The notes beneath the pieces are model-generated. The model was given only the letters and a program-made list of their open reading frames with translations, was not told where the DNA came from and did not search any database. A stretch of DNA of 64,000 bases from Chrysemys picta bellii (lineage: Eukaryota). Shown piece by piece: positions 15,902 through 26,907 of the stretch. The translations under genes and the position numbers were made by a program. The stretch spans positions 3,782,001-3,846,000 of the forward strand of contig NC_088794.1 of NCBI RefSeq assembly GCF_011386835.1, in the 5' to 3' direction. The stretch's first letter is position 1. Each line of letters starts with the position of its first letter.

Positions 15902-16999
15902 GTTCGGACTGTGAGCCATTCGGGGCAGGGACTGGCTCCCACTGTGGGTCTGGGCAGCGCCCGGCACCACGGGGCCCTGATCTCTGCTGGAGTCTGGGTA
16001 GCACCTGGCACAAAGGACTCCTGGCCTATATTTGGGTGTCATAGGTCCTACAATAATACAGAGAATACTAGTAACAAAATATATGTCTGTCTGCCTCCGC
16101 TGCATCGGTCTGTCTCGATTATATACACCCATCTGTCGAGATTGCGTCTGTCTGTCAAGATGGTGTCTGCCCCTCTGTCTAAATTCTGCCTGTGTAGGCT
16201 GTCTGTCTCTTAATGTGTGCAATCCAACCATCTGATAATACTGTGTCTGTCTGTCTGTTTAGATTGTGTCTATCTAGATTGTGTCTGCCTGTACTGTCTC
16301 CATCTGTCTATATTTTGTCTGTCTGTCTAGGACGGATCTATCTCTCATTACTCAGAATGATACAAGATAAATAACCCCAAGAATATTGTAAATTTCCTTG
16401 GGCTGTTCTGTGCTTGGCCATTTACAAACAAAGACAAAATAAGGGACCCCATGCACCCCTGAGGTACACACACACACACTCACACTCACACCGGAGTCCA
16501 GCTATATATACACAAACACCCTGGAGTTTAGCTATAGATACACACACACCGTGGAGTTGAGCTGCACACACGAACACACACACGCATACACACAAACACA
16601 CACACACACGCACAGCAGAACCCGGTGAGTCCCCTTGAGAAAGCTCCCTGGCCATTTTGGGACACATCCCCCCATTCGGCATATGGCAGCAGCTCCGTGT
16701 CACAGAAACTCGGGTGGGGGAGTTCTCAGTTACACGGGACCTGGGGACAGAGCGAGGGTCCAATGTGCCTGGGGCGAGGGGAAGGCTGGGAATGGGGAGG
16801 GGGTAATCTTGGGGCGGGGGGAGTGTTGGTGGCACATGAAGCGGTTTCCCTGGAAGGGTGAGAAGAGGCAGGTGATAGGAGGACTGGTTGGGCCACATTC
16901 CCCGCCCAGGCAGACAGCTGACACGGGGCAGTGGGGTCACTGGGGCAGCTCACCGACCCCCTAGTACTCTGCTAAAGCCAAGCTGGGAGCTGCTGGGCC

Positions 17000-17054
17000 A
17001 TGGGATCCCCCTGCACCCCAATAACCATCCTTCTCCTTCTGCCCATGCTGCAGG
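17000..17054 (+). CDS. Module 1 alternative first exon (signal peptide [18 protein letters not shown])
   Basis: GCCATGG start context, 18 codons + 1 nt, GTAAGT donor (phase 1). Confidence 0.6.
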
Positions 17055-25000: not shown

Positions 25001-26907
25001 CCAGAGCCCGGCTCCCTGCGGCTGCCCCTGTCCCGCGCCGTGGGCCACACACTCTACTCTGGGGAGGGCTCCAGCGGAGACATCGCCCTGGCCCAGCTGG
25101 GCCGCCCCGTCACCTTCACCTCGCAGGTGCTGCCCGCCTGCCTCCCGGATGCCGGGGTCCACTTCCCCGCCGGGACCCTCTGTTGGGTTACTGGCTGGGG
25201 GTCGCCACAAGAGGGAGGTGAGGAGGGAGGAGGGGGCAGCTGAGGGGGAGGGGAATGGAGGGGGCAGGAGGAAGAACAGAGAGGGGAGGGGGGGGAGTGG
25301 AGATGGGAGGGGCCATGAGGAAAGGGGGAGGGGAGGGGAACGCAGAGGAGGAGGGGCAAGGAGGGGGGAGCAGAGGGGAGCACTGGAGGGGACAGGGAGG
25401 GGGGCATTGTGTTCTCCTCCTCCCCCAGGGTCCTCTCCCCCACCCAGGCAGTGTTAACCCTTCCTTCCCCACCAGCCCTGCTCCCAGCCCCCATGACGCT
25501 GCAGCAGCTGCAGGTGCCCCTGATCGACCCACTGCCCTGTGATGCCCTTTATCAGCGCCGGAGCGCCATGAGGGATATCCAGGACGACATGGTGTGCGCC
25601 GGCTACGCCGAGGGACAGAGAGACGCCTGCCAGGTGAGAGCAGGGGGCTGCGGGGCGGGAGTGAGGGGCACCGGCAGAGCTGGGGGGAGCCCAGGGCTGG
25701 GCTAGCAGGGGCTGCGGGGCGGGAGTGAGGGGCACCGGCAGAGCTGTGGGGGGGCAGGGCTGGGCTAGCAGGGGCTGCGGGTCGGGAGTGAGGGGCACCG
25801 GCAGAGCTGGTGGGGGGCAGGGCTGGGCTAGCAGGGGGATGCGGGTCGGGAGTGAGGGGCACTGGCAGAGCTGGGTGGGGGGGCAGGGCTGGGCTAGCAG
25901 GGGCTGCGGGTCGGGAGTGAGGGGCACTAGCAGAGCTCGGGGGGCAGGGCTGGGCTAGCAGGGGCTGCGGGTCGGGAGTGAGGGGCACTGGCAGAGCAGG
26001 GGGAGGCAGGGATGGGCTAGCAGGGGCTGCGGGTCGGGAGTGAGGGGCACTGGCAGAGCTGGGTGGGGGGGCAGGGCTGGGCTAGCAGGGGCTGCGGGTC
26101 AGGAGTGAGGGGCACCGGCAGAGCTGGGGGGGGGCAGGGCTGGGCTAGCAGGGGCTGCGGGTCGGGAGTGAGGGGCACCGGCAGAGCTGGGGGGGGGCAG
26201 GGCTGGGCTGGCAGGGGCTGCGGGTCGGGAGTGAGGGGCACTGGCAGAGCTGGGGGGGTCAGGGCTGGGCTGGCAGGGGCTGCGGGTCGGGAGTGAGGGG
26301 CACCGGCAGAGCTGGGGGGGGGCAGGGCTGGGCTGGCAGGGGCTGCGGGTCGGGAGTGAGGGGCACCGGCAGAGCTGGTGGGGGCAGGGCTGGGCTAGCA
26401 GGGGCTGCGGGTCGGGAGTGAGGGGCACTAGCAGAGCTGTGGGGGGAGCCCAGGGATGGGCTAGCAGGGGCTGCGGGTCGGGAGTGAGGGGCAGCGGCAG
26501 AGCTGGGGGGGGCAGGGCTGGGCTAGCAGGGGCTGCGGGTCGGGAGTGAGGGGCACTAGCAGAGCTCGGGGGGCAGGGCTGGGCTAGCAGGGGGCTGCAG
26601 GTCGGGAGTGAGGCCGGTGTCACCGATTCTCTCTTCCCAGGGCGATTCGGGGGGCCCCCTAGTCTGCCAGAAGTCTGGGCTGTGGTTCGTGGCCGGCGTC
26701 GTCAGCTGGGGCGAGGGCTGCGCCCTCCCCAACCGCCCTGGGGTCTACATCCGGGTCGGTGCCTACCTGGACTGGATCGGGCGGCACGTGCCCAACGCCA
26801 CCTTCGGGGTTGTCAATATCACCACTTACAGCCTGCCGGGGGGCGGGCCCCCCAGCCCTGCCCCTGCTGCCCTGCTCCTAGCCACCTGGCTGCTCAACAT
26901 TCTCTGA
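22006..26907 (+). CDS. Gene 3: trypsin-like S1A serine protease, predicted GPI-anchored, 313 aa (using the proximal module-5 first exon)
   Basis: Exons 22006-22060 ([18 protein letters not shown]), 22752-22778 (AARDNGIQT), 24616-24778 ([13 protein letters not shown]...AAHC), 24946-25217 (GDIAL), 25476-25633 (RDACQ), 26641-26907 (GDSGGP...[16 protein letters not shown]). Total 942 nt in frame. Confidence 0.9.
22815..24378 (+). mobile_element. 5'-truncated CR1 LINE (ORF2 reverse transcriptase fragments) in gene 3 intron 2
   Basis: [33 protein letters not shown]...[15 protein letters not shown]; ends GGCCATTCTTATGTTCTTA; frameshifted. Confidence 0.93.
25640..26612 (+). repeat. G-rich ~57-60 bp minisatellite (gene 3, last intron)
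   Basis: Unit GGGGCTGCGGGTCGGGAGTGAGGGGCACCGGCAGAGCTGGGGGGGCAGGGCTGGGCTAGCA, about 16 copies; also two units at 24790-24905. Confidence 0.95.

What the first reader, a model, noticed from the sequence alone, without database searches (positions are those of the whole stretch)
15902..26907. Five tandem promoter + signal-exon cassettes feeding one protease body (variable-first-exon architecture)
Seen: five ~1.1-1.3 kb modules each end in an intact 55-nt exon with ATG in good Kozak context, a hydrophobic signal-like peptide and a phase-1 GTAAGT donor (17000, 18135, 19446, 20761, 22006). Each donor is in frame with the single micro-exon 2 (22752-22778) and catalytic exons of gene 3. Established: clustered protocadherin and UGT1A loci use tandem variable first exons spliced to constant exons. 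Inference: this could be a young analogue in a serine protease locus. Because the signal peptides are almost identical, the array would multiply promoters (dose, tissue breadth) rather than change the mature protein. I am not aware of this being described for tryptase/prostasin-type clusters.
Basis: partly seen in the sequence, partly recalled or inferred. Interest (0 to 1): 0.88.

Follow-up and report, generated by a model that had tools for sequence, protein, structure and literature searches.

The report
Tandem promoter–signal-exon array, turtle protease
A painted-turtle serine-protease gene is preceded by five diverged tandem copies of its own promoter and 55-base signal-peptide exon; at least two kinds of copy are spliced to the same gene body in RNA, which adds a small example to the known "multiple variable first exons" gene layout.

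Summary
Five tandem units of 1135-1315 nt each end in an intact 55-nt exon (good Kozak context, hydrophobic peptide, phase-1 GTAAGT donor) at 17000, 18135, 19446, 20761 and 22006. Each is in frame with micro-exon 22752-22778 and an intact 313-aa S1 protease gene (Chrysemys picta bellii; PRSS27/33/prostasin-like).

The N gap (18968-19101) lies in a CA-rich non-coding stretch of unit 3, 345 nt upstream of that unit's ATG. No reading frame crosses it and its flanks are collinear with the other units. Extra hidden units cannot be excluded.

- **RNA:** one spliced contig joins the module-5 exon to exon 2 and exon 3. A contig from another study joins a module-1-to-4-type exon to the same exons. A further RNA-like run holds 11 of 12 sampled words of module 1's 5'UTR plus exon.
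- **Constraint:** the exon copies vary far less than their flanks (pi 0.022 against 0.154; P about 1e-6).
- **Age:** the array is not young. Units are 10-23% diverged. Carettochelys has three intact modules with the same unit boundaries. Trachemys keeps only the module-1 orthologue after a 4.9-kb deletion. Two squamates have one signal exon.

Verdict: a real multi-promoter, multiple-first-exon locus. Use of all five modules is unproven.

The parts
15902..17054 (+). Unit 1. It is 5'-truncated relative to units 2-5 and starts inside the 3' part of a MIR-like SINE. It holds the upstream region plus exon 1 copy 1 (17000-17054, [18 protein letters not shown], one synonymous T).
   Evidence: The Trachemys orthologue is 95% identical. 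RNA-like run X25 holds 11/12 sampled words of 16890-17054.
17055..18189 (+). Unit 2: SINE head and body, about 1.1 kb of upstream region, and exon 1 copy 2 (18135-18189, ..MLR, CGG|GTAAGT).
18190..19500 (+). Unit 3, with the assembly gap 18968-19101 in its CA-rich upstream part; exon 1 copy 3 at 19446-19500.
   Evidence: RNA contig X6 record 23 lies on 19426-19499 and continues into exons 2-4. Over that span modules 3 and 4 are identical, module 1 differs by two letters (-20, +37) and module 2 by two (-3, +53).
19501..20815 (+). Unit 4; exon 1 copy 4 at 20761-20815. It also holds an open SINE-derived ATG..|GTAGGT stretch (19686-19760) that matches the first exon of the Trachemys gene model.
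20816..22060 (+). Unit 5; exon 1 copy 5 at 22006-22060 ([18 protein letters not shown]). Its 5'UTR reaches at least 21915.
   Evidence: RNA contig X1 record 1 lies on 21915-22059, then exon 2, 24612-24778 and 24946-25100.
21906..21955 (+). Conserved block at -100..-51 of every module (coordinates given for module 5). It is the likely core promoter or 5'UTR start.
   Evidence: pi is 0.04 here against 0.15-0.19 in the neighbouring blocks. The X1 contig begins near it.
22061..22751 (+). Remainder of intron 1. Its first ~77 nt repeat the start of a unit (SINE head).
22752..22778 (+). Constant micro-exon 2 (27 nt, phase 1 to phase 1; AARDNGIQT).
   Evidence: Both RNA contigs carry 24 letters between the exon 1 piece and the exon 3 piece, exactly the number expected for exon 2. 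It is conserved in Carettochelys P0158.
24616..24778 (+). Exon 3 (activation site R|IVAGED; catalytic His in AAHC).
24946..25217 (+). Exon 4 (catalytic Asp in DIAL).
25476..25633 (+). Exon 5.
26641..26907 (+). Exon 6 (GDSGGP catalytic Ser, hydrophobic C-terminal tail, stop codon).

Best explanation
This is a multiple-first-exon, multi-promoter locus.

**What it is.** The 5' end of one PRSS27/33/prostasin-like S1 protease gene of Chrysemys picta bellii has been amplified into five tandem units. The amplified piece is about 1.1 kb of upstream region, the 55-nt signal-peptide exon and the first tens of bases of intron 1.

**How it arose (inferred).** Unit junctions lie in copies of a MIR-like SINE: a head just after the donor and a body about 1.1 kb upstream. 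This suggests unequal recombination between those SINE copies.

**How it works (inferred, by analogy with protocadherin and UGT1).** Transcription starts about 100 nt upstream of the ATG of a given unit. That unit's cap-proximal CAG|GTAAGT donor is spliced to the single acceptor of micro-exon 2. Downstream exon-1 copies have no usable acceptor and are removed with the intron.

**What is shown.**
- The anatomy.
- Splicing of module 5 and of a module 1-4-type exon to exons 2-4.
- Presence of module 1's 5'UTR plus exon in an RNA-like run.
- Much lower variation in the exon copies than in their flanks.
- Persistence of multi-unit arrays in two turtle lineages.

**Consequence (inferred).** All copies encode practically the same signal peptide, so the array changes where, when or how much the gene is transcribed and leaves the enzyme unchanged. 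The upstream regions have diverged; for example, a CCGCCC box is present in modules 1-3 and absent in modules 4-5.
For: - **Array and exons:**
- **Spliced RNA contigs using module 5 (X1) and a non-module-5 exon (X6):**. The module interiors have zero depth in the three RNA-like runs and are covered in the DNA run.
- **Module 1 in RNA:** X25, from the same study as X1, holds 11/12 sampled words of module 1's -110..+55. That equals the share held by genomic runs.
- **Constraint:** 3 of 55 exon columns vary, against 32.5% of 997 flank columns. Binomial P = 1.4e-6. The exon is one of the two least variable 55-column windows of the unit. The -51..-100 block is also conserved.
- **Carettochelys insculpta:** three tandem units with intact 55-nt exons and GT donors. 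They are collinear with the Chrysemys unit over its whole length, and the first unit is truncated at the same unit position. Unit C3 is only about 70% identical to C1 and C2, as far apart as the two species are from each other.
- **Trachemys scripta:** it keeps only the module-1 orthologue. The 4.9-kb deletion junction carries a 7-nt filler, so it looks like a real deletion. Module 1 would then be the gene's only first exon there.
- **Squamates:** the Podarcis and Rhineura orthologues have one signal exon.
- **Known class:** tandem variable first exons, each with its own promoter, spliced to constant exons (PMC1885805, PMC3325998).
Against: - Only two exon-1 classes were seen in RNA. The non-module-5 contig starts 22 nt before the ATG, so it cannot be assigned to one of modules 1-4.
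- The RNA evidence is assembled contigs. They show presence only, and give no start sites or abundance.
- The runs are RNA 'by guess', although two contigs are spliced.
- X25 could hold module 1 as read-through or unspliced RNA from the upstream gene.
- Individuals may differ in array structure.
- Gene conversion could contribute to exon similarity. The +7 T is shared by modules 1-4, while the flanks pair module 4 with module 5, which hints at mosaicism.
- Trachemys manages with one module, so extra modules are dispensable at least there.
Confidence: 0.7

Rival explanations
1. Mostly relics. The array is a by-product of SINE-mediated unequal crossing-over. Only one or two units (module 5 and perhaps module 1) act as promoter and first exon. 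The others are silent passengers whose exon similarity is kept up by gene conversion from the active copies.
For: - Only two exon classes were seen in RNA.
- Trachemys lost four units and keeps an intact gene.
- Phylogenetic signals conflict: the +7 T is shared by modules 1-4, but the flanks group module 4 with module 5. That is compatible with conversion or unequal exchange.
- ORF intactness alone is weak evidence for a 55-nt exon.
Against: - Conservation is sharply bounded. The exon has pi 0.022 and -51..-100 has pi 0.04, while -1..-50 between them has pi 0.15 and intron +31..+80 has pi 0.25. Conversion tracts would not be expected to respect exon borders in all five copies.
- In Carettochelys, C3 and C1/C2 have stayed intact over about 0.5 substitutions per site of flank divergence.
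Confidence: 0.22
2. The upstream exon copies are not first exons. They are seen in RNA because transcription reads through from the neighbouring upstream protease gene, giving polyserase-like fused transcripts or unspliced precursors.
For: - Database model P0003 ('polyserase-2-like') fuses an upstream paralogue to this gene and reads module 5's 5'UTR as coding.
- 23 letters at the 5' end of the X1 contig did not align.
Against: - The three RNA-like runs that were laid have zero depth across the non-repeat interiors of the modules (19902-20701 and 21102-21901).
- The X1 contig runs collinearly through the supposed acceptor at about 21935.
- No polypyrimidine tract precedes the exon copies.
- The fused model is not identical to the window in its upstream half.
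Confidence: 0.05
3. Assembly artefact: fewer units exist, and the copies or their order come from mis-assembly around the N gap.
For: There is a gap inside unit 3, and the array is tandem and repeat-rich.
Against: - Units are 10-23% diverged, so they cannot be duplicated reads of one locus.
- Module-specific stretches recur with 0-3 differences in contigs of other DNA runs of the species.
- A gap-free Carettochelys assembly shows the same kind of array.
Confidence: 0.03

Closest known systems
Multiple variable first exon clusters (clustered protocadherins, UGT1A, GCNT2, UGT2A; Zhang, Haws & Wu 2004, cited in Li & Wu 2007, PMC1885805)
   Same: - Tandem first exons, each with its own upstream region and 5' splice donor, joined alternatively to one set of constant exons.
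- Lineage-specific gain and loss of units, as described for Ugt1 and Gcnt2.
- GCNT2 also has 'highly similar' variable exons.
   Different: - The variable exon is only 55 nt and encodes just the first 18 residues of a signal peptide.
- The copies are almost identical (0-1 residue apart), so no protein diversity results.
- The array is small (1-5 units).
- Promoter choice and its mechanism are untested.
Genes with several alternative non-coding first exons and promoters (NOS1, glucocorticoid receptor NR3C1, plectin; listed in PMC1885805)
   Same: The effect is regulatory only: the same mature protein is made from several promoters.
   Different: In those genes the first exons are unrelated or long diverged, and mostly non-coding. 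Here they are recognisable tandem duplicates that carry the start codon.
PRSS27 (marapsin) / PRSS33 / prostasin (PRSS8) / testisin (PRSS21) group of S1A serine proteases
   Same: - Trypsin fold with the His/Asp/Ser motifs.
- Six-exon layout with a separate signal exon.
- Hydrophobic C-terminal tail.
- Tandem gene cluster.
- Sources name the closest relatives 'serine protease 27-like/33-like'.
   Different: - No tandem first-exon array was found in the two squamate orthologues checked.
- I know of none described for the mammalian genes (own knowledge; two literature searches gave nothing relevant).

Membership tests
Multiple variable first exon architecture | Two or more tandem first exons, each with its own 5' splice donor and no functional acceptor | tested here: met
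   There are five 55-nt exons with CAG/CGG|GTAAGT donors. No pyrimidine-tract acceptor lies in front of them.
Multiple variable first exon architecture | Alternative first exons spliced to one common set of downstream exons | tested here: met
   X1 contig: module 5 exon to exons 2, 3 and 4. X6 contig: module 1-4-type exon to exons 2, 3 and 4. This is shown for two classes only.
Multiple variable first exon architecture | Each variable exon preceded by its own active promoter or transcription start | tested here: inconclusive
   - The 5'UTR of module 5 is present in an RNA contig to at least -91.
- Module 1's -110..+55 words are held by RNA-like run X25.
- A conserved -51..-100 block lies in all units.
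- No cap or start-site data exist, and there is nothing specific for modules 2-4.
Multiple variable first exon architecture | Variable exons give different protein N-terminal parts (typical of PCDH and UGT1, though not required of the wider class) | tested here: not met
   The copies encode MGSP/MGAP..MLQ/MLR, 0-1 residue apart, in a signal peptide.
S1A (trypsin-like) serine protease, PRSS27/33/prostasin-like | Trypsin domain with the catalytic His, Asp and Ser motifs and an activation cleavage site | tested here: met
   - PF00089 matches three exon translations (E 1e-15 to 1e-16).
- AAHC, DIAL, GDSGGP and R|IVAGED are present in the spliced product.
- Identity is 81% to Carettochelys 'serine protease 33-like'.
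S1A (trypsin-like) serine protease, PRSS27/33/prostasin-like | Signal peptide and C-terminal membrane or GPI anchor | not testable with these tools
   A hydrophobic N-terminal core ([10 protein letters not shown]) and a hydrophobic C-terminal tail ([12 protein letters not shown]) are visible in the sequence. No predictor for either feature was available.

The most novel reading that the evidence does not exclude
Turtles maintain, under purifying selection and for on the order of 100 million years, an array of near-identical promoter-plus-signal-exon modules in front of one secreted or anchored protease gene. Copy number differs by lineage: 5 in Chrysemys, 3 in Carettochelys, and 1 in Trachemys after a deletion. 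All modules would be active, with diverged upstream regions dividing tissues or adding dose. This would be a purely regulatory form of the multiple-first-exon layout, not reported for S1 proteases.
Probability: 0.4. Interest if true: 0.6.

Novelty: new member of a known kind. Interest (0 to 1): 0.5.

Why it matters
The locus gives a compact natural case of promoter multiplication by tandem duplication of a gene's 5' end.

- It has direct RNA evidence for at least two units.
- It shows sequence constraint on all exon copies.
- It comes with a built-in comparative series of 5, 3 and 1 units among turtles.
- This series makes it possible to test whether duplicated promoters divide up expression or simply add dose, without any confounding change in the protein.
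- It also warns annotators. Public gene models at this locus are fused with neighbours or start in an exonised SINE.

Tried and rejected
- **Full-length protein search left out.** I reached relatives instead through exon 4 and the stored model P0003.
- **Transcript-derived N-terminal fragments.** A search with P0003:225-345 found nothing.
- **More turtle loci.** Pelusios P0157 and Gopherus P0016 have no contig on record, so only three turtle species could be compared.
- **Read laying (one call).**
  - The table of other letters was truncated, so the single difference in the X6 exon-1 piece could not be read.
  - The contig could therefore not be assigned among modules 1-4.
  - Run X5 (another species) gave no informative piece.
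- **Rfam.** Nothing reached the gathering score in 15500-27200.
- **Literature.** Two of the three literature searches gave no case of a tandemly duplicated signal exon in a protease gene.
- **'Young duplication' rejected.** Unit divergence, the Trachemys orthologue and the Carettochelys array all speak against it.
- **Assembly duplication rejected.** The copies are 10-23% diverged.
- **The N gap was not filled.** Only the length of the matching segment in the other units was compared.
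Full report

The repeat finder reports a five-copy direct repeat with start-to-start spacing of 1135, 1311, 1315 and 1245 nt across 15.9-22.1 kb. An alignment of the 300-nt ends of the units shows an invariant core. A pattern search finds exactly five 55-nt units of the form ATG...C(A/G)GG|GTAAGT, at 17000, 18135, 19446, 20761 and 22006.

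The units encode [18 protein letters not shown] in modules 1, 3 and 4. Module 1 carries one synonymous T. Module 2 ends in ..MLR and module 5 begins with MGAP...

Kozak contexts are good, and there is no upstream ATG in -115..-1. Each donor is in phase 1.

With exon 2 (22752-22778, 27 nt) and exons 24616-24778, 24946-25217, 25476-25633 and 26641-26907, every one of the five donors gives an uninterrupted 313-aa product. That product has Pfam Trypsin matches, the His/Asp/Ser motifs and a hydrophobic C-terminal tail.

In the whole 2.37-Gb assembly the exon sequence occurs only at these five places. The upstream region alone also matches in front of the two neighbouring paralogues.

**2. The assembly gap.**

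The N run 18968-19101 lies in the CA-rich part of unit 3's upstream region, 345 nt before that unit's ATG. In the unit alignment the flanks are collinear, and the other units have 53-77 nt where unit 3 has 134 N. No reading frame crosses the gap. I did not fill it. It could in principle hide whole extra units, so five is a minimum.

**3. Anatomy and origin.**

A unit runs from just after one donor to the next donor. It consists of the following parts:
- the head and body of a MIR-like SINE (GGGAGCCAGGACNCCTGGGTTCTA..., then ...TGTGTGACCTTGAGCAAGTC...)
- about 1.1 kb of upstream region with TGTC- and CA-rich simple repeats
- a conserved promoter-proximal part
- the exon

Unit 1 starts inside the SINE's 3' part. 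The sequence after module 5's donor repeats only the first ~77 nt of a unit. Unit junctions therefore lie in SINE copies that flank the original upstream-region-plus-exon-1 segment. Unequal recombination between them is the likely origin (inference).

Units are 77-90% identical to each other. CpG observed/expected is 0.2-0.29, so these are not CpG-island promoters. Rfam finds nothing in the region.

**4. Constraint.**

Among the five units, 3 of 55 exon columns vary (pi 0.022), against 324 of 997 non-exon columns (32.5%, pi 0.154). The binomial P is 1.4e-6. The exon is one of the two least variable 55-column windows of the unit.

A second conserved block lies at -51..-100 (pi 0.04). The stretch between it and the ATG (-1..-50) has pi 0.15, and intron +31..+80 has pi 0.25. 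Borders this sharp fit selection on the exon and on a core promoter or 5'UTR start better than they fit gene-conversion tracts.

**5. RNA.**

Runs that hold the gene body were found. That stretch holds modules 3-5, exon 2, exon 3 and part of exon 4. It avoids the gap and the 63-bp minisatellite.

Two contigs are spliced, so those two runs are RNA:
- **X1 record 1 (1463 nt)** lies on 21915-22059 (module 5's 5'UTR and exon, one difference). It then has 24 letters not placed, then 24612-24778 and 24946-25100. Twenty-four is exactly what exon 2 requires, given the 1-nt and 4-nt overlaps.
- **X6 record 23 (1371 nt; another study, same species label)** lies on 19426-19499 with one difference. It then has the same 24 letters and the same exons 3 and 4.

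Over that span module 5 differs from modules 3 and 4 at five positions (-20, -8, -6, -2 and +7). The X6 exon is therefore not module 5's.

The three RNA-like runs have zero depth over the non-repeat interiors of the units, while the DNA run X16 covers all bins.

A second run search used module 1's -110..+55. X25, an RNA-like run of the same study as X1, holds 11 of 12 sampled words, the same share as the genomic runs.

At least two classes of first exon are therefore spliced to the same body, and module 1's UTR is probably transcribed.

Limits of this evidence:
- Contigs show presence only; they give no starts and no levels.
- The X6 contig begins 22 nt before the ATG and cannot be assigned within modules 1-4.

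**6. Other species.**

A profile-free search with exon 4 and then a search with stored model P0003 identify the window as Chrysemys picta bellii. They also give orthologues in Trachemys, Pelusios, Gopherus and Carettochelys.

*Carettochelys insculpta (L008, gap-free).* It has three tandem units with intact 55-nt exons:
- at 7321: [18 protein letters not shown]|GTGAGT
- at 8728: [18 protein letters not shown]|GTGAGT
- at 10001: [18 protein letters not shown]|GTGCGT

These units are collinear with Chrysemys unit 4 over its whole length. The first unit is truncated at about the same unit position (~225, against ~211 in Chrysemys).

In a tree the units group by species. Carettochelys unit 3 is only ~70% identical to units 1 and 2, as far apart as the two species are from each other. 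Two readings fit this result:
- the array predates the split and has turned over since
- it arose twice between the same SINE pair

In either case multi-unit arrays with intact exons have persisted for a long time.

*Trachemys scripta (L009).* It is collinear with the window from 13181 to 17382 (95%) and again from 22286 (97%). It therefore lacks 4.9 kb and keeps only the module-1 orthologue. The junction carries a 7-nt filler, as real end-joining deletions do.

Module 1 against the other units (≤88%) is more diverged than module 1 against its Trachemys orthologue (95%). The array therefore predates the split of these two emydids, and it is not young.

*Squamates.* The orthologues in Podarcis and Rhineura show one signal exon within 10 kb upstream and inside the gene.

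**7. Comparison with what is known.**

The layout is that of 'multiple variable first exons': protocadherins, UGT1, GCNT2 and UGT2A, and the non-coding first exons of NOS1, GR and plectin. In these loci tandem first exons, each with its own promoter, are spliced to constant exons and evolve by lineage-specific duplication (PMC1885805, PMC3325998).

This locus differs in three ways:
- the variable exon is tiny
- it encodes only part of a signal peptide
- it is practically identical between units, so the effect can only be regulatory

Two of the three literature searches found no such array for a protease gene. That absence is weak evidence.

**8. Verdict.**

- It is wrong on age.
- It is unproven for units 2-4 individually and for separate transcription starts.
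- I file it as a new member of a known kind, of moderate interest.

Noticed in passing
window 8256-8414 and L007 1300-1665 (2.7 kb upstream of the window); window 2629-2683: The two upstream paralogues keep a homologous ~1.1-kb upstream region up to the ATG. Directly after the ATG an unrelated sequence begins (TGTA[T/C]AAGCAGGG...), identical in both genes. It is probably the LTR element noted at the window's start. In gene 1 the rest of exon 1 follows 5.3 kb later (2629-2683). Its signal peptide looks damaged (MRAPCEPITILFLRPMPQ) and a CATG repeat sits at both ends of the insertion. The insertion therefore predates the gene 1/gene 2 duplication and splits the promoter from exon 1.
   Followed up: partly
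L009 9835-10790 (Trachemys scripta) against window 17383-22285: Trachemys lacks 4.9 kb (units 2-5). The junction has a 7-nt templated filler (GTATATG). Trachemys keeps only the module-1 orthologue.
   Followed up: partly
window 19686-19760; L009 10001-10075: The public Trachemys gene model (P0151) starts in an exonised MIR-like SINE (MEKGENVPAFVRLDCEPFGARPGSH|GTAGGT) that is spliced to exon 2. In Chrysemys only unit 4 has the open frame and the GTAGGT donor; units 3 and 5 have a stop codon and no donor.
   Followed up: partly
protein P0003; window 21931-22032: The public model 'polyserase-2-like [Chrysemys picta bellii]' fuses an upstream paralogue with this gene and translates module 5's 5'UTR. 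It is probably an annotation artefact. Its upstream half is only 92-96% identical to the window.
   Followed up: partly
window 25639-26613, 24784-24908 and 29114-29912: There is a 63-bp G-rich minisatellite (15.4 copies, 91% matches) in intron 5. Short related copies lie in intron 3, and a similar array lies in the oppositely oriented neighbouring protease gene.
   Followed up: no
window 22830-24350: Intron 2 holds a degenerate LINE (CR1-like) reverse-transcriptase fragment (..YLDFQKAFD..). It attracts very many contigs in all runs.
   Followed up: no
window 4534-6767, 10500-12736, 30102-28238 (-), 50836-54482: Four further trypsin-like genes lie in the window, 39-57% identical to gene 3 in their matched exons. 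This is a tandem protease cluster. A second assembly gap lies at 31529-31964.
   Followed up: no
window 3169-3600, 42000-42400, 47742-48200: Tandem arrays of ~75-bp units are derived from the same SINE head (GGGAGCCAGGACTCCTGGGTTCTA) that forms the junctions of the exon-1 units.
   Followed up: no
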